From the IMG/VR virus record IMGVR_UViG_3300044712_002668, positions 271,989-335,988 of that record: a stretch of 64,000 nt of DNA. One strand, 5' to 3'. Each line of letters starts with the position of its first letter. Position 1 is the first letter of the stretch. The position numbers and the translations under genes were made by a program. The notes beneath the pieces were generated by a model. It searched no databases, was not told the origin of the DNA, and saw only the letters and a list, made by a program, of their open reading frames with translations. Shown here one piece after another: positions 19,846 through 57,696 of the stretch.

Positions 19846-20805
19846 CTATTTGATTTGATTATAAACATCTTTAAATAATCTTGCTATCTTTACAAGCTCA
19901 CTTATATGTGAGCTTTTTTTATTCTTACCAAACACACCAGAGATATACTTTTCTGCTTCTTGCAGGGTTTTCAATGGTTCCTTCCTTAATACGGATTCGT
20001 GTTTGGTTGCTTTACCATGAGCCTTTTCATAATTATCCCCATCATAAATCATATGTTCACACTCTATGATTTCATGAATGAGTATAGGGATGAGTTCTTT
20101 CTTTTCATAGTGTGATTCAATCCATATCGTATTGTTTGGTACATAGGAATACCTTCCAGGGTTTCCTCCCATAACAAAATCAGTATCAAACTTCTGACGT
20201 ACCAAATTACCATCTACAAGATTTACTTTATAACCGTATACTTCGCCAATTTCTTTTGTAACAACATCTTTATCAGAGATGTTTTTATGTTTTTTATATT
20301 TATCCATTCTCTTTTCTGGAGAATCTTTCTCTTTCCATAAAACAATTATACGTTTATCTACGGGTTTTTTATGGTTATCCTTTGGAAATGTAAACCATAT
20401 CGGAGCGAATTCTTTTTGTGTGATGATTTTATATTCACCAACTGAAGGATCCATTATCTCTATCTCTGTATCGTTGATGTCAGATACTACAGAATAATGA
20501 GAATCATCATTGCTAAACCACTCTACAATGATTTGATAATTCTCTTTCAATAATTTCTCTACTTCTTTAAAAGAAGAATTGTTTTTTATATAACCTTTAA
20601 GATTATATTTCTTGGCACCGCTTAAAAGATCTTCAGCTTCTATACCATGCTCTTCAGTGGCACCGATATTCTTGGCAATATCTTCCAACTCTTCATGGGT
20701 ATTATAGAAATGCAGGATGCTTTTCAGACATGCCGGTCCACAGAAACCTGGGGTCTGATCAATCGCTATAGGTTTTTTATAAAACTTTTCTTCAGCTTTC
20801 GTCAT
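19846..20805 (-). CDS. C39-family cysteine peptidase fused to an HExxE domain
   Basis: QTPGFCGPACL, SHYSVV, IMDP triad; C-terminal VDG..VR...HEIIEC domain paralogous to 27744..28280. Confidence 0.8.
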   Translation of the reverse strand: MTKAEEKFYKKPIAIDQTPGFCGPACLKSILHFYNTHEELEDIAKNIGATEEHGIEAEDLLSGAKKYNLKGYIKNNSSFKEVEKLLKENYQIIVEWFSNDDSHYSVVSDINDTEIEIMDPSVGEYKIITQKEFAPIWFTFPKDNHKKPVDKRIIVLWKEKDSPEKRMDKYKKHKNISDKDVVTKEIGEVYGYKVNLVDGNLVRQKFDTDFVMGGNPGRYSYVPNNTIWIESHYEKKELIPILIHEIIECEHMIYDGDNYEKAHGKATKHESVLRKEPLKTLQEAEKYISGVFGKNKKSSHISELVKIARLFKDVYNQIK

Positions 20806-20845: not shown

Positions 20846-23281
20846 ATGAAAGCAAACAAAGAACAGAATTTAAACAAGCATTTGTACTGTGTGATGCTTA
20901 TGGCCATGCATTGTGCTGAATATCTTGGCGTCAATGATACGGCTCTCAAAGAGGTCATCGGGCTTTCTGCTTTCCTTCATGACGTAGGTAAGGCTACCAA
21001 ATATTTTCAAAACATCTCCCTCAGGGAAGAGAAGACCAGCACCAAAAAGTTTTTCGATCTTATTCGTGAACAGTATCCCCAATTTTCCGGAGAGGATGGT
21101 AAGGATTGGTATCCGAGGCATAACGAAATCTCATGGTTGTGGGCGGCTCTACACGCTACCGGTAAGTCTCTGTTCAAGAAGGTTGGCCTCCAAGCTATCT
21201 ATTGGCATCACGGAACCTTTGATATCAACCCTATCCGAGATACTGATACCAAATCCCTTGTAGAAGAATTGACCAAGTTCTCTCCCGATGAATGGAAAAC
21301 CATTGACCAAACAATCAAATCCCTTATTGATAATACAAACTTTCCTTTTGATATTACAAAGTATCTTGATGATAACATTGAACATTGTAAGATGTCACCT
21401 TTGTTTGATATTGAAGATAAGGCTGCCAATAATGGCATGATTGAAAACGCTCAGCGTTGGGTTATTCGTAGTTGTGTGATGTATGCTGATGCTACTGTTT
21501 CAAGGATGTCTTCCGATGAATTGAATGATCTAATTCTCAATAGAAATCCAGCTACTTATTTCAAGCCTTATTATCTCTCTGTGAAGCCTGAGTTTGTTTG
21601 TCCTGAAGGTTACGATCCGGAACGTTTCAGGATTCAGAGTGAGATTTATAAGAGTTGTAATCATACTACGGTTGTAAAGGCTCCTGCTGGTTTCGGTAAG
21701 ACCTTGATTGGTTTGATGTGGGGCCTGCTACATGGACAACAGTTCTATTGGGTTTGCCCTCGTAATGATGTTGCCCAAGGCGTTTTCGAAAACATCAAGG
21801 AAGAACTCCGTAGACTTAACATCAATATCAATGTTGAATTGTTCCTGACATCGGAACGTCAAGACTCATTTGGACCGAATGTACCGCATGTACATGGTAC
21901 GTGTGACATTGTGGTAACGAACATTGATATGTTGATGGCTCCATTGCAGAGTCACAAGCATGCATGCAGGGTTTTTGATATCAATGCTCGTAACATTATC
22001 ATGGATGAGTTCCATGAGTTGATTGGTGATGAAGGAATGTTTTCGGCCTTTATCAATTATATGAGGGCTCGCAATTTGATTTGCTCAAATACGAGAACCT
22101 TGCTCTTGTCAGCTACTCCTTCCGTCCTGAATGAACTTTGGGATAGCGATACAAAGCAAACCAGGCTTCTTCCAGATGATGAACATCATTATAAGGCTCA
22201 GCATGATAAGCCTTATTACTTCAAGTTCGCTACTGCAATGCCCACCAAGCCGTTGCCTGGCTCGTTGAGTATGTATTGCAGCATTTCCACTGTCATTGTA
22301 AATTACAATCCAAGAGTTCATACGGCAATTATTCACAGTCATTATCCAACGAATTACAAGAAGGACATTTTGAATGGAATTTTCAAGACCTTTGGAAAGG
22401 GAGGGGATAAGAATGGGACTGTGATATCAGCGCCTATTCTACAGGCTGCATTTGATATTTCATTCAGGAGTATGTATAAGGCAGTTGAATCTCCTGAGGG
22501 AGACATTCAGCCACTTGGGCGTGTGAATCGTTGGGGAGAGTTGGAGAGTGCAGAGGTTGTGTTGGTACCTTTGGCGGCTTCTAATCCTAGTGAACGGGGA
22601 GCAATCAATACCCGATATGATTTGGACCTGCACCGGGATTGGTTGAAGTATTTGAAGAACAATATAAAGTCAAAGGCTACGTTGGATGAGGTTTATTCTT
22701 TGTATAATGCTTACAATAATGTTGCCAAGCCGAAGTTGATATCTTATTATTACAGGTGTTTGGATAAGGCAACTGAGAGATTGTCAAAGTTCTTCCCCAA
22801 GGACTTCGGAGTTTCCCGGCCTTCTCGTGATAATATCAAATCGGTTTCAAATCTGAGAAGTTATTCTCCATCATTCTTTATTGTAGTAAGGAATTTGAAG
22901 ACCAAGGATTGGCATCCATTTGCTTTCAATATTCAGAACTATGATTTGGATGAGTGCATAAGTGAAAACCGGGAGAAGTTGGAAGCGTATACAATTAAAA
23001 CTGTTATGGAGCATTTGAATGAATTGAAGTTTGAGGATGGCGAATGTCATTTTGATTATAGTAAGATTTTGAATAGGTTCTTCAATCCAAAGAGGAAGAG
23101 TGAGAAGAAGATTGGTGGCAAGCTTGTAAAGATAACTTCCAAGGTTCGTAAGAATTATAAGGCAGAAGATTTTATTGATTATATCAGGGAAACAAAAACG
23201 CCATTGCCGGTGTTTGATAGGTTCTTTGATCCTGTTCGTGGTTTGGTTAAGGAAGAGTTTTTGTACGCAATCAATTATTGA
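20846..23281 (+). CDS. cas3: CRISPR-associated Cas3 (HD nuclease plus SF2 helicase), no Cas2 fusion
   Basis: KHL...LHDVGKA...RHNEIS...WHHG...AD; APAGFGKT, DEFH, SATP, GRVNR; adjacent to cas genes and array. Confidence 0.92.
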   Translation: MKANKEQNLNKHLYCVMLMAMHCAEYLGVNDTALKEVIGLSAFLHDVGKATKYFQNISLREEKTSTKKFFDLIREQYPQFSGEDGKDWYPRHNEISWLWAALHATGKSLFKKVGLQAIYWHHGTFDINPIRDTDTKSLVEELTKFSPDEWKTIDQTIKSLIDNTNFPFDITKYLDDNIEHCKMSPLFDIEDKAANNGMIENAQRWVIRSCVMYADATVSRMSSDELNDLILNRNPATYFKPYYLSVKPEFVCPEGYDPERFRIQSEIYKSCNHTTVVKAPAGFGKTLIGLMWGLLHGQQFYWVCPRNDVAQGVFENIKEELRRLNININVELFLTSERQDSFGPNVPHVHGTCDIVVTNIDMLMAPLQSHKHACRVFDINARNIIMDEFHELIGDEGMFSAFINYMRARNLICSNTRTLLLSATPSVLNELWDSDTKQTRLLPDDEHHYKAQHDKPYYFKFATAMPTKPLPGSLSMYCSISTVIVNYNPRVHTAIIHSHYPTNYKKDILNGIFKTFGKGGDKNGTVISAPILQAAFDISFRSMYKAVESPEGDIQPLGRVNRWGELESAEVVLVPLAASNPSERGAINTRYDLDLHRDWLKYLKNNIKSKATLDEVYSLYNAYNNVAKPKLISYYYRCLDKATERLSKFFPKDFGVSRPSRDNIKSVSNLRSYSPSFFIVVRNLKTKDWHPFAFNIQNYDLDECISENREKLEAYTIKTVMEHLNELKFEDGECHFDYSKILNRFFNPKRKSEKKIGGKLVKITSKVRKNYKAEDFIDYIRETKTPLPVFDRFFDPVRGLVKEEFLYAINY

Positions 23282-23316
23282 AGTTCAATCAACCAACCAA
23301 CAAGGAAAAAAACAGC

Positions 23317-24429
23317 ATGTCAATCGCCAAGTCTCTGCTTCTTCGTGTCCTTTTCAATGGTGATGGAATCGTCAATTTTGATTCTCCGGATCAAAAGTAT
23401 CTTTGGAACAAGTTGGAGGGGGCAGGTTTTATCAGGCACAATAATACCATGGTTGGAAAGGCCAGGTATGAGTCAAAAAAGGTAACTCGTCAGAATCAGG
23501 ATAAAGAGGATTATGAGAAGGAGGTTTATACACGGGTTCCAATCAATTCTGCAGACTGCATTCGTCATACCATGTATGAAGATGTGATGCGAACGCATCT
23601 TCCCAATGTTCAGCATGATGATGATTGGTTGATTCGTACCATTGCAAACCCTGCTTTCATCCAGCGTGGGTATATGTTCCCCCGTGCCAACAAGGAATCT
23701 TGGAAGCGCAAGTCTTCATTGGCTTTCGGTTATGCCAAGGGTATTACGCCAAGTGTTCCGGCAATTGAAACGTTTTCAAATTCTCAAGAAAGGGATAATG
23801 TTGAGAAGAGCGAGAGTGGTTCTGAGACATCTTTCTTCTCTCGTGAGGTTCGAGGACAAGTAAATTATGAAATGACTGGAGTAATTGATTTGGCTGAGCT
23901 TGGGTTTATCTCCTTGAGTGATGTTCATGATCGTTTGGGATTCCATCCCGATCTTGATGGTGAGTTTATTGAGATGTTCAAGAAGCATTTCAAGTTTGAG
24001 GATACGATTACTTCTGGGTATTTTGTTCGTGAAGGTGATGCTTATGAGATTCCTGAGCAGGGTATTCTGCTTGGGGACAAGTATGTTATCGCCATGGTTG
24101 AGGATATCCTGAAGCGTTTGGCCAGGTTCAATTTGGTTCGTACCACTACTGGTTTTCTTCAGACTGCCAAGGTTGAGGTTATGGTTGTCAAGGATCCTTT
24201 GACTGACCGTGTTACCAATACTGATGGTTGGATTAATGTTTTTGATAATGGTAAGTTTTCTGTTGACTTTTTGAAGGGTCTCAAGATTGAGCGTGTTTAT
24301 AATGAGACCTCTATTGAGGAGGCTATTGAGAAGGTTCGGCATTATAAGGAACTGAAGAATGTTGATGAGCCGGTTGTGGAAGCCAAGCCCCCGAAGAAGC
24401 CGCGTGGCAAGAAAGAGGCGGCGGCATGA
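23317..24429 (+). CDS. cas7: Cas7 backbone subunit, type I-F2 (Cas7fv)-like
   Basis: G.GIVN, S.DCIRH, RGY, KR.S.L, TSFFS, L.FISL...DR, E.GILL, L.RLA, collinear with recalled Cas7fv motifs. Confidence 0.82.
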   Translation: MSIAKSLLLRVLFNGDGIVNFDSPDQKYLWNKLEGAGFIRHNNTMVGKARYESKKVTRQNQDKEDYEKEVYTRVPINSADCIRHTMYEDVMRTHLPNVQHDDDWLIRTIANPAFIQRGYMFPRANKESWKRKSSLAFGYAKGITPSVPAIETFSNSQERDNVEKSESGSETSFFSREVRGQVNYEMTGVIDLAELGFISLSDVHDRLGFHPDLDGEFIEMFKKHFKFEDTITSGYFVREGDAYEIPEQGILLGDKYVIAMVEDILKRLARFNLVRTTTGFLQTAKVEVMVVKDPLTDRVTNTDGWINVFDNGKFSVDFLKGLKIERVYNETSIEEAIEKVRHYKELKNVDEPVVEAKPPKKPRGKKEAAA

Positions 24430-25328
24430 GCAAGTATATTCTGCTTCTGGATTTTCAAAACGCAGGAATCTTTAAAAAGTATTGGCATAAAACAGAGCCT
24501 CGCTCTGCTTCCGGTGATGACCGTATTTTTGATGGAAAGAATTCCGATTATCGTCGTAAGGATCAATGGATTGAACCTTCTACGGTAACCTTTCATTATA
24601 GTTTTATTGAGAATGTTTTGAGAGTTCTTGCCGGGCGTAGACCCGTTCCTAAGTATCGCTCATCCTGTGTTGAACATGATGATGATATAATCAGGTTGGC
24701 TAAAAATAGTTATGTAAAAATTGATGCATTGGTCAGGCATTGGGAGGGGAAGCCTGACACATTTGCCACAGAGACCATGACAGTCAGGAAGGCGTCATGG
24801 AATGCATGGAATCAGGGTTGTATAGTTGGTTGGAAAAGGTTGGAGAATTTGTTGCCTGAGGATTTGTTCAATGAATTCTGTAGATTGGTTGAGAATATTT
24901 TTGGAATTGATTATTATAGAAAGGTTACGTTGAGTAAGGTTATTGAGAAGATTCATACGATGAAGAATGATAAGAGGATCATATCATTGTGTGACAGGGC
25001 GGTAGCCGTTTCGTGTACAAATTTCAAGCATCTATTGTTGGAAACTGGGCAGCCAACATTTTTTCAAGCCAGTTATAAGAAGTATGGGGATTCAACGGAA
25101 GCGAATGTTTGTATGAGAACCTTGACTGTGAAGGGAATTGCTGATGTAAGCAGATTGGATGGTATGATTGGAGTACCTGTAACGGCTGAAGAGTTGGAGA
25201 TGTTCCGCAAGGGTCGTGGATTTGCCACATTGTTTGATGGGGGTTTGGTAACTATAAACAAGGTTGTAGATTTGGAGTATTCAAACACTGGTGTAGTTTT
25301 GAATGGGTATACGCAAGCACTACAATGA
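24426..25328 (+). CDS. cas5: Large Cas5 subunit, Cas5fv-like with helical insertion
   Basis: 300 aa; IENVLRVLAG helix and C-terminal Gly loop ATLFDGGLV; lies between cas7 and cas6. Confidence 0.65.
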   Translation: MSKYILLLDFQNAGIFKKYWHKTEPRSASGDDRIFDGKNSDYRRKDQWIEPSTVTFHYSFIENVLRVLAGRRPVPKYRSSCVEHDDDIIRLAKNSYVKIDALVRHWEGKPDTFATETMTVRKASWNAWNQGCIVGWKRLENLLPEDLFNEFCRLVENIFGIDYYRKVTLSKVIEKIHTMKNDKRIISLCDRAVAVSCTNFKHLLLETGQPTFFQASYKKYGDSTEANVCMRTLTVKGIADVSRLDGMIGVPVTAEELEMFRKGRGFATLFDGGLVTINKVVDLEYSNTGVVLNGYTQALQ

Positions 25329-25846
25329 ACCTGTATAAAATCCACAAGGCATTTGCGAATCCTTATCAGAACCACCAGGCATTGAAGAACTTGTTTCTGG
25401 GAGAGGGGCGGGTTCTTTTCCAGAACTTGGGTTCTTCTTTATTGGTGCTTTCTCAAATAAAGTTGAGCGATGAATACCGGAATAACTTTTTGATTGATTT
25501 TCTTGATATTGATAATTGTTTGAATGGTGACATTATGAATTTTTCTATCAGGTTGAATGCTTGCAAGGGCAGTCAGGGCAAGCGATATACGTTGAAGGAG
25601 GATGAATTTGAGAGGTGGGTTGATTGGAAGATGGGACAAGCTGGAGTTTCATTGGTTAAGAAGAGCATTCATAATGAGGGAGTTATTGTTAGTGACAGGC
25701 AGGGTGGGCATTGTTATCATGCTTCATTGTTTGTATCTGGTATATTGAAGGTTGAGGATAGGGTTTTGTTCAGCAAATCGGTTGAGCTTGGCATTGGACA
25801 TGGCAAAGCTTTCGGGTTCGGGTTGTTGAATGTGTTTACGTGTTAG
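25325..25846 (+). CDS. cas6: Cas6 endoribonuclease, Cas6e-like
   Basis: NPYQNHQAL, F.IRLNA.K, C-terminal GIGHGKAFGFGLL G-loop. Confidence 0.88.
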   Translation: MNLYKIHKAFANPYQNHQALKNLFLGEGRVLFQNLGSSLLVLSQIKLSDEYRNNFLIDFLDIDNCLNGDIMNFSIRLNACKGSQGKRYTLKEDEFERWVDWKMGQAGVSLVKKSIHNEGVIVSDRQGGHCYHASLFVSGILKVEDRVLFSKSVELGIGHGKAFGFGLLNVFTC

Positions 25847-25847
25847 A

Positions 25848-27473
25848 GTTCTCTACTGGTTTTTGTAGGGATTGAAATAAATCTGTCGCTCAGCGCTCCT
25901 TTGCCTCGTTGAATTGAATTCCCTACTATATTATGTAGGGGTTGAAATGAGCAATTGGCCATAGCTTTCAGGGAACAATACGATCATTGAATTCCCTACT
26001 ATATTATGTAGGGGTTGAAATCCCCCAACGACCTGGAGTTTTTACAGATCCAATTAAATTCCCTACTATATGTAGGGATTGAAACCGAATCAGGATATGT
26101 CGTCGTGGTTGTGTATCGGTATAATTGAATTCCCTATTATATAGGGATTGAAAAGTCGCATTCGAAGTCAAGACCGCTATTGGTAAAGTATTCCTACTAT
26201 ATGTAGGGATTGAAACACCCTGCGTTGGGCCCGAAAGAGACCGGCGGTTGTCCGATTGAATTTCCTACTGTATGTAGGGATTGAAATATAGGAGGCTCCC
26301 TCGGGGATGTGTCAGTGCGAACATTGAATTCCCTGCTATGTGTAGGGATTGAAATGATGTGGTCGGTGCCATATTCCTACCGCGTGACTGAATTTCCTAC
26401 TGTATGTAGGGATTGAAACTCCGTTGGTTCCCGCGAGATGGTTATCGTGGAGGTATTGATTCCCTATTATATAGGGATTGAAATAACGTTTTTGAAGGTC
26501 CGTCGCGTATAGCTTAGTTTAGTTTCCTACTATATGTAGGGATTGAAACGTGCGTATGACATAGAAGTGTGTTGCCGTGATGGTTCCCTGCTGTATGTAG
26601 GGATTGAAATCTTAGTTTCACCGGAATTCAGGTGATGACATTTATTTCCCTGCTTTATGTAGGGATTGAAATGCGAGCAGTCTAAATTCTTCGGCAGTCA
26701 GTTTGGAGTCGGTTTTCCTACCAAGGTAGGGATTGAAATGGTGGACATAACCAGAATAGTCGTGGACTTGTAGTTAATCCCTAATAAAATAGGGGTTGAA
26801 ATGTAGTTGGCGGATTTAAAGGAGACCAACTAAATCTCCCTACAATATGTAGGGGTTGAAACTTTCTCTCTTTTCCGCGTCCATCAGTCTTTATGATTCC
26901 CCGCTATATGCAGGGATTGAAATCCGCAACCACCGTTTAGTCCTGCTAACATTACGTAGTTCTCCGCTATATGCGGAGGTTGAAACCCTACTCCGTCTTT
27001 CAGTGACGCTACCGTTTTTATTCCCTATTTATGTAGGGGTTGAAATAAGGATGGATCCAATCATTGGGATGTTCTATTGTCTCCCTATTTATGTAGGGAT
27101 TGAAACAGCGGAAGAACTCAATCTTTCCAAGTTTGATTGATAGTTTCCCTACTAAATATAGGGATTGAAATGCTATTTATGATATGATTCAGCGTGTCAA
27201 AATAGTTTTCCTACTGTAGTGTAGGGATTGAAACTCCACTGCATCTAGTACAGCGAATGATTCTTAATGTCCCTGCTAATAAGCAGGGGTTGAAACTACC
27301 CTGATAGACTGCCTTCTATTGATTATGATGATTCCCTACAATATGTAGGGATTGAAATCGTCAGGCTATTGATGAGAATGCCATTGTTCAATGTCCCTGC
27401 TGATGTAGGGGTTGAAATCAAAGCACGCCTTCGGGCAGTACAATTAGAATCATCTCCCTACACCATGTAGGGA
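25848..27473 (+). CRISPR. CRISPR array, 26 degenerate repeats and 25 spacers; consensus (ATTGAA)TTCCCTACTATATGTAGGGATTGAAAY
   Basis: Hairpin plus RTTGAAA recurring every 60-73 nt from 25877 to 27417; last repeat lacks the handle. Confidence 0.95.
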
Positions 27474-29027: not shown

Positions 29028-30071
29028 ATGCACGAGAAAATGAATAAGGTTTTGGCTGGCCTTGGTATCAATGGTAAGTGCATCCTCGCTAACCAACACC
29101 GTCATCTTGCTTATTTCGATATATCTCTTGAACCGCGTACTTCTATTCGTACCCTGGAAAGGAATGCCCGAGAGATAGCCTTGGGCATTCGTAGCAAGAC
29201 CACACCTATTGTTAAGGTGATTCCCGAGGAGGGAGTTGTAAGGCTTCAGGTAGCAATGGAGGATGCCAAGCCTATTCTTCATAAATCTATTTACAATCGT
29301 ACATTTCAGGTAAAGGAGATTCTTCCATTTATCCTTGGCGAGGATGAAACGGGCAACAAGCTTGTTATGGATATGGTAAAGAATCCTCATCTTCTTATTG
29401 CGGGTGGTACAGGTTCTGGCAAGTCCGTTCTACTACATAATCTTATTGCGAATGCTATTTATCTTCGAGCAATCAAGTTCACCAATACCGATTTGATTCT
29501 GGTTGATCCCAAGCGTGTGGAGTTCAACTTCTATAATGATCCTTTGTTTCCGTTTATTCATATTGAGAACACGTATGAAGGTTGTGTAGAGATGCTTGAG
29601 GAGATGGTGTTGGTCATGGAGCGAAGGTATGCTCATATGGCTAGTATCAATGTCCGTAGTGTTGAGGATGATCCTGGTTTGTTTGTATTCAAGATGATTG
29701 TGATTGATGAGGTTTCCGACCTTATTCTGCAGGATAAGGAGAAGCATCTTCATGATTTGTTGATTACTCTGGCTCAGAAGGGCCGAGCTGCTGGTATCTA
29801 TATTGTTCTGGCTACTCAGCGTCCCAGTGTGGATATTATTACTGGTACTATCAAGGCTAATTTCCCTGGCCGGATTGCTTGTAAGACTGCTTCCCGTATT
29901 GATTCAAAGGTTATTCTTGATGAAATTGGAGCCGAGAGTTTGCTGGGCCGAGGCGATGCCATCCTGAAGAACATGGAACATGATAGGGTCAGGTTTCAGG
30001 TTGCCTATACGGATGAGAATCAGATTAAATCTACCTATAAGTTCTTTACTGAATACTACAGGGCAGCATGA
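29028..30071 (+). CDS. FtsK/SpoIIIE-family motor domain (soluble; no TM or gamma domain)
   Basis: PHLLIAGGTGSGKS, VDPKRVE, IDE, GRAAGI...ATQRPS, GAESLLGRGD. Confidence 0.9.
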   Translation: MHEKMNKVLAGLGINGKCILANQHRHLAYFDISLEPRTSIRTLERNAREIALGIRSKTTPIVKVIPEEGVVRLQVAMEDAKPILHKSIYNRTFQVKEILPFILGEDETGNKLVMDMVKNPHLLIAGGTGSGKSVLLHNLIANAIYLRAIKFTNTDLILVDPKRVEFNFYNDPLFPFIHIENTYEGCVEMLEEMVLVMERRYAHMASINVRSVEDDPGLFVFKMIVIDEVSDLILQDKEKHLHDLLITLAQKGRAAGIYIVLATQRPSVDIITGTIKANFPGRIACKTASRIDSKVILDEIGAESLLGRGDAILKNMEHDRVRFQVAYTDENQIKSTYKFFTEYYRAA

Positions 30072-48359: not shown

Positions 48360-49406
48360 ATGATAGTAAGAACTGACGGGCTCATCAAAACCGTAACCTC
48401 TCCCGATTACAATTACAAGTTTGATTTACGAAACGGAAACTTTTGTAGATGGGGAAAAACTCTTGATGACGATCCTGTTCAGGCTCCTCATCCTGAGATT
48501 GCTGATATAGAAGTAACTACCATTTGCTCTGGTTTGAATGGTAAGGTTTGTGCCCATTGTTATAAATCAAATACACCAATGGGTTTCAATATGTCTCTGG
48601 ATTTATATAGAAAAATACTTTACAAGATATCTGCATCAGGCTTACTTACCCAAGTAGCTTTCGGTGCGGATAGTACCGGATATTCCAATCCAGAACTCAT
48701 AGACATGATGGAGTTTACCCGTAGTCAAGGAGTGATTCCTAATATTACGGTAGCTGACATTGATACTTTTATGGCTAAAAAACTGGCCGGTGTTTGCGGT
48801 GCAGTTGCTGTCAGCCGATATGAGAACAAAGAGTATTGTTATAACTCCATTGCCAGATTGGCAGAGGCCGGGTTACAACAAATCAATATTCATTTAATGA
48901 TTAGCAAGGAAACATATCACCTTGCAGAAGAAACAATCAAGGATATCCAAACAGATCCTAGATTGAAAAGCCTTAAGGCTTTGGTTATGTTGTCTCTTAA
49001 ACAAAAGGGTAGAGGAACAAAGTATACCCCTCTTACTCAGAAAGAGTTTCACTCCCTGGTAAAACAAGGAGTGGATGCCGGAGTGTCTCTTGGATTCGAT
49101 TCCTGTAGCGCAATCAAGTTCCTCAATACTCTCAAAAAAGGAAAAGAATACTTAAAAATCAAACAACAGGTTGAACCATGTGAAAGTACTTTGTTCTCTA
49201 TATTTATCAATTATAGAGGAGAGGCTTTCCCTTGTTCATTTGCTGATGGTATCCCTGGGTGGGAAAGAGGCATTCCTGTTATTGGGTATACACACTTTTA
49301 CGATGTATGGCATCATGAAAGAATGATTGAGTTCAGGAACAAGTTATTGGAAACAAGCAAACAAAATTCCCATGATTGCAGGGAATGTCCTTTGTTCAAG
49401 GTATAA
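48360..49406 (+). CDS. Radical SAM protein with SPASM/twitch-like C-terminus
   Basis: DIEVTTICSGLNGKVCAHCY (Cx7Cx2C); PCES...PCSF...CRECP. Confidence 0.85.
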   Translation: MIVRTDGLIKTVTSPDYNYKFDLRNGNFCRWGKTLDDDPVQAPHPEIADIEVTTICSGLNGKVCAHCYKSNTPMGFNMSLDLYRKILYKISASGLLTQVAFGADSTGYSNPELIDMMEFTRSQGVIPNITVADIDTFMAKKLAGVCGAVAVSRYENKEYCYNSIARLAEAGLQQINIHLMISKETYHLAEETIKDIQTDPRLKSLKALVMLSLKQKGRGTKYTPLTQKEFHSLVKQGVDAGVSLGFDSCSAIKFLNTLKKGKEYLKIKQQVEPCESTLFSIFINYRGEAFPCSFADGIPGWERGIPVIGYTHFYDVWHHERMIEFRNKLLETSKQNSHDCRECPLFKV

Positions 49407-51170: not shown

Positions 51171-51422
51171 ATGAAAACAATATATGCAATTCTGGCATTT
51201 CTAACTGTAACAACTATTACAACAACGGCATTTGCTGATGTAAAGACAACTGTTTGGAAGGATAGTTATGGGTATACATTCGATGACGATCCTTTGTCAG
51301 CCGGTGGCTTTGGTCCAAATGATACTGTAATCAAAGTCAGGGCCAAAGCTGCCAAGACTACATTGATTCGTCCAAGAATATCATTTGTTACTGAGCTTAT
51401 AAAGTCAGTAGAGTATATCTGA
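51171..51422 (+). CDS. Secreted CglF/GltF-like small protein (myxobacterial gliding family)
   Basis: Signal peptide ending AFA; YTFDDDPL.AGG.GP....I.VR......LIRPR.SFV.EL.KSVE. Confidence 0.6.
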   Translation: MKTIYAILAFLTVTTITTTAFADVKTTVWKDSYGYTFDDDPLSAGGFGPNDTVIKVRAKAAKTTLIRPRISFVTELIKSVEYI

Positions 51423-51636
51423 AAGTCAATAGAAATGGGCTGTGGTAGTTATTCCGGGCAGCATGTTGGGCTTTATTATGGAGCGGATCCTTCTGGAAAA
51501 GGAAGGATCCCTCCCTATGTCCATAAGAACTATGGCGATCTCTATGAGGTTATCATCAAGAAAGATGATAAGCATTTCGTAATAGCTACATGTATATACG
51601 AAGAGGATGCTTACTCTGTACTAAAACCATATCAAC

Positions 51637-52101
51637 ATGCATAGATTATTTCCTGTAGAATTTATAAGGCAATGTATAGAAATTTATATCAAGGATCATG
51701 GTAAACCACCAAAGATACTTGTTGTAAGTAATATTGATATGGTTGATTACACTATCACATGTTCAATGCAACAGGTGAAAAGTTTACTTGATATAGCACC
51801 AGATTTAAAAATAACAACTGGTTATTATCTTGAAAGAGGCGAAATAGATTTAGCCATGGTAGATATTAATGATTGTGATAGAGAAAAACTAAACTCTATC
51901 ATGTATGATCTCATCCTGAACGATCCTTATATTGAAGAGGATGAGTTGGCAGATGATGCTTTTGTCATTATGTTTCCAGAAGCAGACTCTGATACTCCAG
52001 ATATTTTTAATGAGTTTGCCCACATGTGGATCAGGATGTTGATAGATTCCGATCCTGGTTATAGATGTAGTTGTGGAAGTGGATTCCATAAAGAAAGATA
52101 G
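51637..52101 (+). CDS. Hypothetical protein with SEC-C-like CSCGSG tail
   Basis: ORF. Confidence 0.5.
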   Translation: MHRLFPVEFIRQCIEIYIKDHGKPPKILVVSNIDMVDYTITCSMQQVKSLLDIAPDLKITTGYYLERGEIDLAMVDINDCDREKLNSIMYDLILNDPYIEEDELADDAFVIMFPEADSDTPDIFNEFAHMWIRMLIDSDPGYRCSCGSGFHKER

Positions 52102-52102
52102 T

Positions 52103-52852
52103 ATGATTCTTATTACTCAGCCAAGAGCTGGCTCATCTCATAATGAAATAATCGCTCTGCAAATGACAGCCAGGGAAATGGGTTGGGATGTGTTCCCCGC
52201 TCCTACTAGCTGGAGAATGACAGATGAGTTTATTGCAACAAAACCTGTAGGGGTTCCTTACGGGTCACAGATATTTTGTGAAACTATTTGTCAACAACTT
52301 GATTGGGGTTTGATAGCTAATCCATTTGATTGGTTGGCCAGTGTCCCACCTGCTTTTCTTAAAAGAAAAGTTGAGTTTATGACATTGGTTGAGGCCAAGA
52401 AAAATACCGAACGTAAGTTCATAAAACCCGCTGATGATAAATGTTTTGACGCCAAGGTGTATGAGATTGGTGAGTTCAATCCTCCTCCGGTTCTTCCAGA
52501 TGAAATACCAGTTCTAGTATCTGATGTTGTAAAGTTTACTGAAGAATACCGTTGTGTTGTTAGGGATAATAAGGTTGTAACACATTCTTGTTATGTTCTT
52601 GGGGATGAGATTTGTAATCCTAAGAACTATCATATCTCAGAAGCTCCAGCAGCATTCTTGAACTCTCTGTTAGAGGTTTACAAGTCTGAGAACGCTGTGA
52701 TTGATGTTGGGATTATGGAGCAAGGATTTGCCGTAATTGAAACAAACCCAATCTGGGCATCTGGAATTTATGGCGGGGATTCTACCGAGATATTGAAGAC
52801 TATGGAAACAACTTGTTATAGGAGTATAGAATGGGCAGAGTTGAAGAAATAA
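52103..52852 (+). CDS. ATP-grasp protein (DUF4343/R2K-like)
   Basis: KFIKP..DK.F.A.VY, EYRC.V, VIDVG, VIE.NP.WASGIY. Confidence 0.75.
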   Translation: MILITQPRAGSSHNEIIALQMTAREMGWDVFPAPTSWRMTDEFIATKPVGVPYGSQIFCETICQQLDWGLIANPFDWLASVPPAFLKRKVEFMTLVEAKKNTERKFIKPADDKCFDAKVYEIGEFNPPPVLPDEIPVLVSDVVKFTEEYRCVVRDNKVVTHSCYVLGDEICNPKNYHISEAPAAFLNSLLEVYKSENAVIDVGIMEQGFAVIETNPIWASGIYGGDSTEILKTMETTCYRSIEWAELKK

Positions 52853-54824: not shown

Positions 54825-55295
54825 ATGAAAATTCGTAATGGTTTTGTAAGCAATAGTTCAGCTTCAAGTTTTCTTTGTCAGATTAGTTTAGAGCATCTAG
54901 CTGGTTCCGATTCTGACTATGAGGAGGGAACTTGTAGATGCCGTGATTGTCATTCACAGTTTTTATCTGAGTATTTAAGAAAGGTAGATATCAAAACCCT
55001 TTCCAAGGAAGAGGTTTCGAAAGCTTTGAAATCTTTATATGTTACAATAAATCCAGAGGATTCCGAGGAGGATCTGAAGGAGATGTTGCAAGATAAAGTT
55101 GAGCTTTGGCAGGGTTGTTCATATACAATTCATGTAACCAGTGTATTCTGTCCCATTTGCAACATGGAGCAATTCAAGGTTGTTGATTTATTGGCCTTTG
55201 CCTTGAAGCAACTTGGTAAGACCGAGGAAGAGTTGACTAAGGATATTGCTGCCAATTACAAAAACTATGCGGACTTTAAAAAGTATTTAGGATAA
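54825..55295 (+). CDS. MKIRNGFVSNSS family Zn-binding protein
   Basis: N-terminal motif; CxxC and CPIC. Confidence 0.75.
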   Translation: MKIRNGFVSNSSASSFLCQISLEHLAGSDSDYEEGTCRCRDCHSQFLSEYLRKVDIKTLSKEEVSKALKSLYVTINPEDSEEDLKEMLQDKVELWQGCSYTIHVTSVFCPICNMEQFKVVDLLAFALKQLGKTEEELTKDIAANYKNYADFKKYLG

Positions 55296-56325: not shown

Positions 56326-56787
56326 ATGAAAATTCGTAACGGTTTTGTAAGCAACAGTTCATCATCAAGTTTTGTTTGTGACATCAGTGGTATGATTCTG
56401 ACTGATGGAGATGATCAGTATTACTCAGCCTATTGTAGTTGTACTGATTGCAAATCAAGATTTGATGGGCAATTTATTCTCAACCTGACCGAAAAACAGA
56501 TCTCAAAAATTTCAAAAGAAGATATTGATGATTTGATTTCAAGTAATGCTGATAGTAGAATAAAATCAATTAGGGATTTGATTTCTGAAGCAAACAATGG
56601 TGATGGTGCCAAGTATATCAATCATGTTCTATGTCCTATCTGTCAATTGAAAGAGGTAAAGAATGATGATGTGGTGGCATTCTTGTTGGCTGAAAAGCAA
56701 GAAACAGTGGCAACAATAAAGGCAGAAATAAAAAAGAAGTTTAAAAATTATCAAGAGTTTAAGGCCGCTATTACGGTTAAGGATTAA
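56326..56787 (+). CDS. MKIRNGFVSNSS family Zn-binding protein
   Basis: MKIRNGFVSNSSSSSFVC; CPIC. Confidence 0.75.
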   Translation: MKIRNGFVSNSSSSSFVCDISGMILTDGDDQYYSAYCSCTDCKSRFDGQFILNLTEKQISKISKEDIDDLISSNADSRIKSIRDLISEANNGDGAKYINHVLCPICQLKEVKNDDVVAFLLAEKQETVATIKAEIKKKFKNYQEFKAAITVKD

Positions 56788-57186: not shown

Positions 57187-57696
57187 ATGAAAACAAGAAA
57201 TGGTTTTGTAAGCAATAGTTCTACTTCTAGCTTTATATGTGATATTTCTGGCTGTGTCATTGTGAGTGATCATGGCGGCAATATGGATGGAGATATTGCT
57301 GAGTGTTTAAAGTGTAGCAGTTCATTTTTATTGAAATATATTGTAACACCAGATATCAAAACACTTTCTGACGAAGATATCAAAGATATCATTTCAGAAG
57401 ATCGTTTCGTTGATCAGGCTGATTTTGATCCGGATGAAATAAATGACAGGGCTGAGCTTGAAAGGCTATTTGGTGAGTTCATAGCTCATATTAATAATGA
57501 ATATAGTGATGGTCATTATTATTCTTTAAGTCATCATTTATGTCCTGTTTGTGCAATGAAAAAGCTTCCAAAAGAGTTATTATTTAGTTATTTGTTAAAG
57601 AAAGCAGGACTTACAAATAAAGCATTGACTAAACAAATCAAGTTGGAATTTGGAACCTTTGAAAAGTTCAAGGAGTTTCTTGATGCTAGTGAATAA
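57187..57696 (+). CDS. MKIRNGFVSNSS family Zn-binding protein
   Basis: MKTRNGFVSNSSTSSFIC; CPVC. Confidence 0.75.
   Translation: MKTRNGFVSNSSTSSFICDISGCVIVSDHGGNMDGDIAECLKCSSSFLLKYIVTPDIKTLSDEDIKDIISEDRFVDQADFDPDEINDRAELERLFGEFIAHINNEYSDGHYYSLSHHLCPVCAMKKLPKELLFSYLLKKAGLTNKALTKQIKLEFGTFEKFKEFLDASE

What the first reader, a model, noticed from the sequence alone, without database searches (positions are those of the whole stretch)
51171..51422. Phage-encoded homolog of a myxobacterial gliding-motility protein (CglF/GltF-like)
Seen: signal peptide plus YTFDDDPLSAGGFGPND..I.VR...TTLIRPR.SFV.EL.KSVE. Recalled: this closely resembles small secreted Sorangium/Polyangium proteins related to Myxococcus CglF/GltF. 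Inference: points to a Polyangiales host and suggests the phage alters the gliding apparatus, either masking a receptor (superinfection exclusion) or changing motility of infected cells.
Basis: partly seen in the sequence, partly recalled or inferred. Interest (0 to 1): 0.6.

Follow-up and report, generated by a model that had tools for sequence, protein, structure and literature searches.

The report
Huge phage carries gliding-motor subunit GltF
A roughly 455-kb bacteriophage carries its own well-preserved copy of GltF, a small secreted part of the myxobacterial gliding motor, which ties this family of giant phages to Polyangia-type myxobacteria and suggests they interfere with how the infected cell moves.

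Summary
Window 51171-51422 (+) encodes an 83-aa protein with a Sec signal peptide (cleavage after AFA22) and a 61-aa mature part.

- **Family.** It belongs to the small, strongly conserved family that sits between gltE and gltG in the gltC-D-E-F-G cluster of Polyangia, in 73 of 82 loci. That family is homologous to Myxococcus GltF/CglF (hhalign 98.5%, E 1.8e-15). The curated CglF model is matched only below its cut-off.
- **Carrier.** The carrier is a 37% GC myovirus-like phage with portal, terminase, sheath and 36 tRNAs, on a 454,833-bp contig. The "provirus" label is a trimming artefact.
- **Other phage copies.** Four other low-GC huge-phage fragments also carry a GltF-like gene. One of them has it at a different genomic position.
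- **Selection.** Between two phage copies, synonymous sites are saturated while the mature peptide stays 91% identical.
- **Other glt genes.** No other glt gene was found in the 336 kb of the phage that was searched.

My best reading is a captured host subunit that occupies the GltF slot of the host's Agl-Glt machine. It more likely keeps that machine working than blocks it. A Polyangia host is inferred, not proven. The GC gap is 15-30 points and no CRISPR link was found. This is a new variant of a known kind, of moderate to high interest.

The parts
51171..51422 (+). Phage gltF-like gene: 83 codons plus stop. The product is P0001.
   Evidence: ORF and translation. Identical JGI gene call. NCBIfam NF033764 CglF at E 0.0019, 18 bits, covering residues 25-81 against profile positions 30-86 of 88. 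hhalign of its family against Myxococcia CglF gives 98.5% probability.
51171..51236 (+). Type I (Sec) signal peptide, residues 1-22, with predicted cleavage AFA|DV.
   Evidence: Read directly from the sequence. The same position carries A-x-A-Q in bacterial homologues. AF2 models residues 2-18 as a helix. All five phage copies keep a signal peptide that has been recoded to low-GC amino acids.
51258..51311 (+). Conserved block KDSYGYTFDDDPLSAGGF, residues 30-47. It aligns with the (T)xYDFEDDVVEGSF block of Myxococcia GltF. By my offset calculation this is the strand that the published model lays against the TonB-like C-terminal domain of GltG.
   Evidence: Invariant columns Y33 G34 Y35 F37 D39 D40 P41 L42 A44 G45 G46 F47. 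Aligned by hhalign. The assignment to the GltG-binding strand is my inference from residue numbers in PMC11761067.
51381..51413 (+). C-terminal amphipathic helix SFVTELIKSVE, residues 71-81. It is the counterpart of the NFVPEMLKSAEDI helix of Myxococcus GltF, which is modelled as docking into a crevice of GltC.
   Evidence: AF2 predicts helix 71-81. F72, S79 and E81 are invariant, and V73, E75, K78 and V80 nearly so. hhalign aligns this segment column for column. The published model is in PMC11761067.
50137..51156 (+). Upstream neighbour, 14 nt away on the same strand: NAD-dependent nucleotide-sugar epimerase/dehydratase, 339 aa.
   Evidence: Pfam PF01370 at 7.7e-42 and PF16363 at 3.2e-36. phrog_540 at 1.5e-74. 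It is not adjacent to the gltF-like gene in the related phage L105, so it is not a conserved partner.
51435..52852 (+). Downstream genes in the same tightly packed + strand array: a 69-aa and a 154-aa ORF of unknown function, then an R2K-clade ATP-grasp protein (52073-52852).
   Evidence: ORFs. Pfam PF18299 at 2.1e-25. The same order is found on a second JGI contig, L083, from another sample.

Best explanation
The gene is a phage-borne copy of gltF (cglF), the small periplasmic connector subunit of the myxobacterial Agl-Glt gliding (focal-adhesion) machine. It was captured from a Polyangia-type myxobacterium and has been kept under purifying selection in a lineage of roughly 430-455-kb myovirus-like phages.

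How it most likely works:
1. During infection the 83-aa precursor is exported by Sec and cleaved after Ala22.
2. The largely disordered 61-aa mature peptide enters the periplasm and takes the place of host GltF.
3. Its YGYxFDDDPL...GF segment pairs with the TonB-like C-terminal domain of GltG, next to GltD.
4. Its C-terminal helix (SFVTELIKSVE) docks into the outer-membrane-associated TPR protein GltC. This closes the force-transmitting link between the inner-membrane motor and the outer-membrane adhesin complex.

I propose that the phage supplies this small, probably short-lived subunit to keep the infected cell's gliding machine assembled (or to set its level) while host gene expression fails. 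Cyanophages do the same with the labile D1 protein. The host is then a gliding member of Polyangia or a close relative.

Shown: homology, secretion signal, phage carrier, conservation, recurrence in other phages.
Inferred: the binding partners, the direction of the effect (sustain rather than block), and the host.
For: **Identity**
- CglF is the only NCBIfam match. It covers the whole mature part and is matched by all 40 family members.
- The CglF model scores form a continuum from 100 to 17 bits across 153 of 201 sampled Myxococcota genomes.
- The profile-profile comparison with Myxococcia CglF gives 98.5% probability, E 1.8e-15, end to end.

**Positional orthology of the bacterial relatives**
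- The gene order is gltC (NF033756, 6e-75), a gltD-like 1236-aa TPR protein, gltE (7e-14), this family, gltG (NF033760, 1.5e-90), then a 3847-aa GltI-like TPR protein.
- The same order is found in Chondromyces crocatus.
- 73 of 82 loci have gltE upstream and gltG downstream.

**Phage carrier**
- Portal, large terminase, sheath, baseplate wedge and prohead protease are present.
- The genome has 36 tRNAs, 93% coding density and 37% GC.
- The contig continues with phage-type genes beyond the IMG/VR cut.

**Kept as a working protein**
- It retains every column that is invariant in A1 (in which it is one of the 40 rows); its differences from the family consensus are conservative ones such as R>K and M>L.
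- Against the copy in related phage L105, pS is 0.86 (saturated) and pN is 0.057 in the mature part.
- Four further low-GC huge-phage fragments carry a copy with its own signal peptide.
- In one related phage the copy sits at a different locus and resembles a different Polyangiaceae subclade.

**Role of GltF**
- It is an 89-aa secreted protein. It localises to focal adhesions and is needed for GltD clusters, and individual glt mutations abolish gliding (PMC3169522).
- It is modelled as a bridge between GltC and the GltG TonB-like domain/GltD, through a strand and a C-terminal helix (PMC11761067).
- The AF2 model of the phage protein shows the same layout, a disordered body with a C-terminal helix at 71-81.
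- Both elements are intact, which fits a functional subunit.
Against:
- The CglF model score (18 bits) is far below its curated cut-off of 90.
- The phage copy stands alone. No other glt gene is present in the 336 kb searched, so there is no contextual support inside the phage.
- The complex prediction with a Polyangiaceae GltG C-terminal domain gave no verdict (ipSAE 0.07).
- The host is unproven. The phage is 37% GC against 52-70% GC for the bacterial loci. The phage CRISPR repeat was not found as arrays in 401 Myxococcota genomes. Ribosomal protein bL12 gave no host signal.
- Nothing distinguishes 'sustains gliding' from 'jams gliding'. An over-expressed intact connector could also titrate partners.
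- GltF turnover has not been measured. The lability argument rests only on its predicted disorder and on processing of a GltF-mCherry fusion.
Confidence: 0.45

Rival explanations
1. Inhibitory mimic or superinfection exclusion. The phage GltF copy is made in excess or is subtly altered. It titrates GltG, GltC or GltD and uncouples the outer-membrane adhesin complex from the motor. The infected cell stops gliding. If the Glt outer-membrane complex or CglB is used as a receptor, its exposure at focal adhesions is prevented and related phages are excluded.
For: - Phages commonly switch off surface motility organelles that serve as receptors. From established knowledge: Pseudomonas phage proteins Tip, Aqs1 and Zip act against type IV pili.
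- GltF is a bridging subunit, so wrong stoichiometry could break the bridge.
- The phage copy carries lineage-specific changes at otherwise nearly invariant columns: Q23D, R55K, R62K, M76L.
- The gene lies among small genes of unknown function, as is typical of host-takeover regions.
Against: - Both predicted interaction elements are retained and all invariant columns are kept. A decoy would be expected to keep one interface and lose the other.
- The substitutions are conservative and follow the AT bias of the phage genome.
- Other phage copies (L106, L107) are 87-93% identical to bacterial GltF in the mature part, which is essentially wild type.
- Nothing shows that any Glt component is a phage receptor.
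Confidence: 0.25
2. The copy serves a Glt-like machine other than the gliding motor, or a social function. One option is the paralogous Nfs-type spore-coat transport system. Another follows from CglF being one of the proteins passed between cells by outer-membrane exchange: the phage version could spread to neighbouring cells and change their behaviour before they are infected.
For: - Most Myxococcota genomes have 2-3 CglF-model matches.
- A second, unlinked copy exists in one Polyangia genome (L039), and a divergent paralogue exists in G001 (L115).
- NfsA-H are described as a Glt-like envelope complex (PMC4488436).
- CglF has a type I signal sequence, and the authors infer from this that integral and associated outer-membrane proteins are also likely exchanged (PMC3325183).
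Against: - The phage copies are most similar to the copy that sits inside the gltC-D-E-F-G cluster, not to the divergent paralogues.
- It is not known whether periplasmic proteins are transferred by outer-membrane exchange.
- No data exist for Polyangia.
Confidence: 0.12
3. Passenger gene or wrong host. The gene was picked up by chance, directly or through another phage. It has no role in the present host, which may not be a myxobacterium. A lower-GC Glt-bearing lineage such as Bdellovibrionota is one candidate. A host without Glt is another.
For: - There is a GC gap of 15-30 points between the phage and all bacterial loci.
- There is no CRISPR, bL12 or spacer link to Myxococcota.
- gltF was also reported in Bdellovibrio (PMC3169522), and I could not sample that phylum.
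Against: - Saturated synonymous change with a 91% identical mature peptide between two phage copies rules out a decaying passenger.
- Five phage contigs carry a copy.
- The best 80 of the 313 genome stretches (the only ones listed) come from Myxococcota-type MAGs. Most are named Polyangiaceae, Polyangiales or Myxococcales, a few only 'delta proteobacterium' or 'Proteobacteria', and nearly all show the same glt synteny. The phage copies are 78-93% identical to them.
- 36 tRNAs, many reading A/U-ending codons, are what a low-GC phage in a high-GC host would need.
- CRISPR-linked myxophages with 46-51% GC are on record (bioRxiv 10.64898/2026.09.14.751636).
Confidence: 0.1

Closest known systems
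GltF / CglF of Myxococcus xanthus (MXAN_4868), NCBIfam NF033764
   Same: - It is a small secreted protein of 83-89 aa with a type I signal peptide and no Pfam domain.
- It has the same end-to-end architecture. The shared motifs are Y-x-F-(D/E)-D-D ... G ... P-(N/E)-(D/G) ... (T/S)-L-I-R-x-R-x-x-F-V-x-E-(L/M)-(I/L)-K-S-x-E at the very C-terminus.
- The AF2 model has a disordered body with a C-terminal helix, as in the published model.
   Different: - Profile identity to the Myxococcia type is only about 32%, and the score against the curated model is 18 bits against a cut-off of 90.
- It is encoded by a phage, away from any other glt gene.
- It is recoded to a 38% GC gene with K, I, T and Y in place of R, M, P and N.
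Polyangia-type GltF (for example Chondromyces crocatus CMC5_058390 and the Polyangiaceae MAG proteins P0014 and P0061)
   Same: - It belongs to the same subfamily. Identity in the 55-57-aa mature core is 76-78% for the window copy and up to 93% for other phage copies.
- It keeps every column that is invariant in the 40-sequence alignment.
   Different: - The bacterial genes lie between gltE and gltG in 73 of 82 loci, in 52-70% GC DNA.
- The phage gene lies between an epimerase gene and genes of unknown function, in 37% GC DNA.
Cyanophage psbA (D1) and similar host-derived auxiliary genes. Analogy from established knowledge.
   Same: A phage carries a single subunit of a large host machine rather than the whole machine. 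The copy is kept under purifying selection and is acquired from hosts.
   Different: - psbA is metabolic and its high turnover has been measured. Here the machine is a motility and adhesion apparatus.
- Lability of GltF is only inferred.
- No phage-borne Glt subunit is reported in the searched literature.
Phage inhibitors of surface motility used for superinfection exclusion (Pseudomonas phage Tip, Aqs1, Zip). From established knowledge.
   Same: These are small phage proteins that act on a host motility organelle.
   Different: Those proteins are unrelated to their targets and act in the cytoplasm or inner membrane on PilB and related components. The present protein is a faithful homologue of a structural subunit and is exported.

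Membership tests
GltF/CglF (adventurous gliding motility protein, NF033764) | Small protein of about 85-90 aa with a type I signal peptide and no lipobox. | tested here: met
   The protein is 83 aa with MKTIYAILAFLTVTTITTTAFA|DV and no Cys lipobox. GltF is 89 aa and signal-peptide positive (PMC3169522). CglF has a type I signal sequence (PMC3325183).
GltF/CglF (adventurous gliding motility protein, NF033764) | Scores above the curated cut-off of the NCBIfam equivalog model (90 bits). | tested here: not met
   The score is 18.2 bits at E 0.0019. The same holds for every Polyangia GltF tested (best E 1e-6). Only 3 of 201 Myxococcota genomes exceed the cut-off. The model is therefore tuned to Myxococcaceae-type sequences.
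GltF/CglF (adventurous gliding motility protein, NF033764) | Homology over the whole mature protein, including the C-terminal helix motif. | tested here: met
   hhalign of A1 against A3 gives probability 98.5%, E 1.8e-15, with 74 columns aligned to the last residue. The HMM match covers residues 25-81 against profile positions 30-86 of 88.
GltF/CglF (adventurous gliding motility protein, NF033764) | The gene lies in the G1 glt cluster between gltE and gltG. | tested here: not met
   The phage copy has no glt neighbour, and no other glt-cluster gene was found in the 336-kb record. The nearest bacterial relatives do meet this feature in 73 of 82 loci.
GltF/CglF (adventurous gliding motility protein, NF033764) | Binds the GltG TonB-like C-terminal domain and GltC (published AlphaFold model). 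| tested here: inconclusive
   Complex prediction of residues 23-83 with residues 540-676 of a Polyangiaceae GltG gave ipSAE 0.07 and no verdict. GltC was not tried, because only one job was allowed.
GltF/CglF (adventurous gliding motility protein, NF033764) | Required for gliding, localises to focal adhesion clusters, and its defect is rescued by cell contact (the cgl phenotype). | not testable with these tools
   This needs genetics and microscopy. The literature basis is PMC3169522 and PMC4488436.
Host-derived auxiliary gene of a phage | It lies on a bona fide phage genome rather than on flanking host DNA. | tested here: met
   Phage hallmark genes are present. GC is a uniform 32-44% along the 336 kb. 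The same small + strand genes lie on both sides and beyond the IMG/VR cut. The same gene order is found on contigs from other samples.
Host-derived auxiliary gene of a phage | Cellular origin, with purifying selection in the phage lineage. | tested here: met
   The family is otherwise found in Myxococcota genomes. In the mature part pN is 0.057 against pS 0.86. Whether there was one capture or several is unresolved (AU p = 0.097).

The most novel reading that the evidence does not exclude
A whole clade of roughly 430-455-kb low-GC megaphages infects Polyangia myxobacteria, and these phages have repeatedly captured gltF from different host lineages. The phage GltF is a working connector that keeps, or takes control of, the focal-adhesion gliding machine of the infected cell, so that the phage steers where its host moves and therefore where it bursts within a swarm. 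This would be the first phage-encoded structural subunit of a bacterial gliding motor, and the first megaphages assigned to myxobacteria.
Probability: 0.3. Interest if true: 0.8.

Novelty: new variant of a known kind. Interest (0 to 1): 0.62.

Why it matters
- **A handle on GltF.** GltF is the least understood essential piece of the Agl-Glt machine. Its role as a GltC-GltG/GltD bridge rests on a structure prediction only. A natural, independently evolving phage version shows which residues cannot change, and it is a ready-made probe for complementation or dominant-negative tests.
- **A host anchor for the phages.** The gene is a rare host anchor for an uncultured clade of 430-455-kb phages. 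It points to myxobacteria. A recent survey of 790 CRISPR-linked myxophages never uses the word "jumbo" and mentions no glt gene.
- **A new kind of auxiliary gene.** It would extend the idea of auxiliary phage genes from metabolism to a mechanical, envelope-spanning motility apparatus. That raises the question of whether phages manipulate the movement of social, swarming hosts.

Tried and rejected
- **Pfam and PHROGs on the protein:** no match.
- **tblastn against 50,697 GenBank phage records:** no match.
- **Complex prediction:** the mature phage GltF with residues 540-676 of a Polyangiaceae GltG gave no verdict (ipSAE 0.07). This is not evidence either way.
- **Host via phage ribosomal protein bL12:** the best cellular hits are all about 45-52% identical and come from Myxococcales, Treponema, Clostridia and Gammaproteobacteria alike. 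This is uninformative.
- **Host via the phage CRISPR repeat:** two single chance-level matches in 401 Myxococcota genomes and no arrays.
- **Spacers:** the whole array against the four related phage contigs gave only chance-level hits. Three GC-rich spacers against IMG/VR gave no exact match.
- **Monophyly of the phage copies:** the AU test gave p = 0.097, so a single origin is not rejected. The 57-column tree is mostly unresolved. An AU run on the full 136-row set did not finish in time.
- **Terminase search in the four related IMG/VR fragments:** none found. They are 23-49% complete.
- **Shine-Dalgarno usage:** moderate, 37% of starts against 13% at random positions. This does not discriminate between hosts.
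- **Provirus reading:** rejected. DNA beyond the IMG/VR cut is the same kind of phage DNA. It includes a bL12 gene, and I suspect that gene triggered the trimming.
- **Not used:** the large representative-protein search was not run, because the word search and family scans settled the family. No alternative genetic code was used.

Full report
**1. What is at the coordinates**

Window 51171-51419 (stop at 51420-51422), + strand, is an 83-codon ORF. Its product is MKTIYAILAFLTVTTITTTAFA|DVKTTVWKDSYGYTFDDDPLSAGGFGPNDTVIKVRAKAAKTTLIRPRISFVTELIKSVEYI. This is a classical type I signal peptide followed by a 61-aa mature part.

JGI's gene call on the source contig is identical. The gene starts 14 nt after a nucleotide-sugar epimerase gene and ends 12 nt before the next ORF. 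It sits in a long, tightly packed + strand array.

**2. The carrier is a huge phage, not a provirus**

The window is the last 64 kb of a 335,988-bp IMG/VR record labelled "provirus".
- The record is 32-44% GC throughout, 93% coding, mostly + strand, and has 36 tRNA genes.
- Twenty of its large ORFs include portal, large terminase, tail sheath, baseplate wedge and prohead protease.
- The underlying JGI contig is 454,833 bp. DNA beyond the IMG/VR cut shows the same small + strand phage-type genes: a CCA-adding enzyme, a second R2K ATP-grasp, a PARG-like gene and a ribosomal protein L7/L12 gene.
- I therefore read "provirus" as a trimming artefact and the element as a myovirus-like phage of at least 455 kb.
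- The window itself also carries a phage CRISPR-Cas system (see section 9).

**3. What the protein is**

Pfam and PHROGs find nothing. The only NCBIfam match is NF033764, "adventurous gliding motility protein CglF". It is weak (E 0.0019, 18 bits, cut-off 90), but it covers the whole mature part.

The word search found 111 homologues at 50-88% identity. All the named ones are Polyangiaceae, Sorangium, Chondromyces or Myxococcales. The scan of species-representative genomes confirmed 313 stretches. The 80 best that were listed come from Myxococcota-type MAGs, most of them named Polyangiaceae or Polyangiales and a few only "delta proteobacterium" or "Proteobacteria". The mature domain is extremely conserved, with 27 invariant columns in 40 sequences. 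Every one of those 40 sequences matches the CglF model, with a best E of 1e-6.

In bacteria this family is the positional GltF.
- In Chondromyces crocatus it follows a 1262-aa and a 479-aa TPR protein and precedes a 3820-aa TPR protein.
- In a Polyangiaceae MAG the order is GltC (6e-75), a GltD-like 1236-aa TPR protein, GltE (7e-14), this protein, GltG (1.5e-90, full length) and a 3847-aa GltI-like protein.
- Across 82 loci, 73 have gltE upstream and gltG downstream on the same strand. The exceptions are cut contigs, the IS-disrupted C. crocatus locus and one second copy.

The CglF model hits 153 of 201 sampled Myxococcota genomes, with a continuum of scores from 100 down to 17 bits. Only 3 are above the cut-off. 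A profile-profile comparison of the Polyangia/phage alignment with a Myxococcia CglF alignment gives 98.5% probability, E 1.8e-15, over 74 columns to the last residue.

So the protein is a member of the GltF/CglF superfamily, of the Polyangia subtype. It fails only the narrowly tuned equivalog cut-off and, being on a phage, the gene-neighbourhood criterion.

**4. The phage copy is maintained, and it is not alone**

- The identical protein with the same neighbours occurs on a contig from a second JGI sample.
- IMG/VR holds four more low-GC (34-44%) fragments of huge phages with a GltF-like gene. They are 23-49% complete, which implies genomes of roughly 170-430 kb.
- L105 is a close relative with conserved synteny. 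Its neighbouring SPASM radical-SAM gene is 71% identical and its GltF is 83% identical.
- Between the window copy and the L105 copy, synonymous sites are saturated (pS 0.86), while the mature 57 codons have pN 0.057. This is strong purifying selection inside the phage lineage.
- L108 belongs to a related phage. Its neighbours match G000 genes at 65-73 kb with 50-80% identity, yet the GltF-like gene lies there and not at the window's position. It is 85% identical to a different Polyangiaceae subclade with the signature RIRVRRGAQR..LIKPRTQF (SH-aLRT 92).
- L106 and L107 are 93% and 87% identical to Polyangiaceae proteins in the mature core. The window copy is 78% identical.
- This pattern suggests repeated capture. 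However, the 57-column tree is poorly resolved and an AU test does not reject one origin (p = 0.097).
- All phage copies have their own signal peptides, rewritten in low-GC amino acids.
- GltF is the only gene shared between the 336-kb phage record and the bacterial glt loci.

**5. How it most likely works**

From the literature:
- GltF (MXAN_4868) is an 89-aa signal-peptide protein. It localises with AglZ at focal adhesions in an AglQ-dependent manner and is needed for GltD clusters, and individual glt mutations abolish gliding (PMC3169522).
- It is the same protein as CglF (PMC4488436).
- CglF has a type I signal sequence, from which the authors infer that outer-membrane-associated proteins are also likely exchanged between cells (PMC3325183).
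- A published AlphaFold model describes it as largely disordered. It bridges the outer-membrane-associated TPR protein GltC, through its C-terminal helix, to the TonB-like C-terminal domain of GltG and to GltD, through a beta-strand (PMC11761067).

In the phage protein:
- The AF2 model (mean pLDDT 62) shows the same layout. The signal helix is residues 2-18, the middle is disordered, and the C-terminal helix is residues 71-81.
- Counting back from the common C-terminus, the published strand corresponds to the YGYTFDDDPLSAGGF block. This is my inference.
- Both elements are intact and carry the invariant residues.

I therefore propose that the exported phage peptide occupies the GltF slot of the host machine. 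Two observations point to a functional subunit rather than a decoy. Both interfaces are kept, and other phage copies are nearly wild type. A functional subunit would sustain or set the level of gliding while host expression collapses, as cyanophage D1 sustains photosynthesis. An inhibitory or exclusion role is the main rival. My one complex-prediction job gave no verdict.

**6. Host**

The case for a Polyangia host is functional. A gene under purifying selection that only makes sense together with GltC, GltD and GltG, and that is 78-93% identical to Polyangiaceae GltF, implies a host with a Polyangia-type Glt machine.

Consistent side evidence:
- The 36 tRNAs are rich in anticodons for A/U-ending codons, including two tRNA-Ile(UAU).
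- The spacers of the phage's own CRISPR array are richer in GC (mean 45%, several 54-63%) than the phage background of 37.8% (resampling p about 2e-4). Its targets are therefore GC-richer DNA.
- CRISPR-linked myxophages with 46-51% GC are on record.

Against:
- The GC gap to the bacterial loci (52-70%) is large.
- bL12, the CRISPR repeat and the spacer searches gave no link.
- Bdellovibrionota, which was also reported to have gltF, could not be sampled.

**7. Novelty**

In the searchable literature, no paper joins "adventurous gliding" with the phage terms I searched. A 2026 preprint on 790 CRISPR-linked myxophages never uses the word "jumbo" and mentions no glt gene. The soil huge-phage paper I checked does not mention myxobacteria. 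GenBank phages have no homologue.

The protein family is known and host-derived phage genes are a known kind. A phage-borne structural subunit of a gliding motor, recurring in megaphages, is a new variant of that kind.

**8. Limits**

- No metagenome-wide scan for further phage copies was made.
- The large representative-protein search was not used, because the family was settled without it.
- No alternative genetic code was invoked.

**9. Other features seen in passing**

- **Phage-encoded type I CRISPR-Cas system.** It comprises Cas3 (20846-23281), a Cas7fv-like protein (23278-24429), an unassigned 300-aa protein (24426-25328), a Cas6/CasE-like protein (25325-25846), and an array of 25 somewhat degenerate repeats at about 25843-27420.
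- **Three paralogous Cys-rich proteins.** They are about 155 aa and begin MK(I/T)RNGFVSNSS.SSF, at 54825, 56326 and 57187. Five tandem copies occur in L105.
- **Other annotated genes.** These are an SNF2 helicase, an FtsK-like ATPase, a C39 peptidase and a SPASM radical-SAM protein.

Noticed in passing
window 20846-27420: A phage-encoded type I CRISPR-Cas system. It comprises Cas3 (20846-23281; HD, DEAD and Cas3 C-terminal domains), a Cas7fv-like protein (23278-24429, NF040577 at 7e-23), an unassigned 300-aa protein (24426-25328), and a Cas6/CasE-like protein (25325-25846). An array of 25 partly degenerate repeats follows at about 25843-27420, with conserved core CCCTAC-N6-GTAGGGATTGAAA[CT] and period 60-73 nt. 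No cas1 or cas2 was seen nearby. Spacers average 45% GC against 37.8% for the phage. No target was found.
   Followed up: partly
L129:15329-15691 (JGI contig positions about 340.2-340.5 kb, just beyond the window end); also L129:13110-14639: The phage encodes a ribosomal protein L7/L12 homologue (120 aa, about 50% identical to bacterial bL12 of many phyla) and a CCA-adding enzyme. I suspect the bL12 gene is why IMG/VR trimmed the contig at 335,988 and called it a provirus.
   Followed up: partly
G000:C1:184644-215020 (outside the window): A block of 36 tRNA genes, mostly on the - strand. It includes two tRNA-Ile(UAU), two tRNA-Leu(UAA), Lys(UUU), Arg(UCU) and three tRNA-Met(CAU), plus two odd tRNA-like genes with two-base anticodon calls.
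   Followed up: no
window 54825-55295, 56326-56787, 57187-57696; L105:7199-9559: A family of paralogous Cys-rich proteins of about 155 aa that start MK(I/T)RNGFVSNSS(S/T/A)SSF and carry CxxC pairs. There are three copies in the window and five tandem copies in the related phage fragment L105. Function is unknown.
   Followed up: no
window 48360-49406 and 19846-20805 (-): A radical-SAM/SPASM-domain protein (348 aa, 71% identical in L105) lies about 1.8 kb upstream of the gltF-like gene, and a C39-family peptidase (319 aa) lies on the minus strand. Together they hint at peptide maturation, but they are not adjacent to each other.
   Followed up: no
window 52073-52852 and L129:17878-18693: Two R2K-clade ATP-grasp proteins (PF18299/PF14243) in the same phage. 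One lies 650 nt downstream of the gltF-like gene.
   Followed up: no
window 10901-13156 and 29028-30071: An SNF2-family helicase (751 aa) and an FtsK/SpoIIIE-type ATPase (347 aa), both encoded by the phage.
   Followed up: no
L039 (second copy in the genome of L033) and L115 (G001:C3:3118283-3118531): Some Polyangia genomes carry an extra GltF-like gene outside the glt cluster. L115 is a divergent paralogue (…VVFKDDPLAAGGFGPNDALLHVPGTPKRVMLLRPRTQFIPELLKSVENL), possibly serving a second Glt/Nfs-like machine.
   Followed up: no
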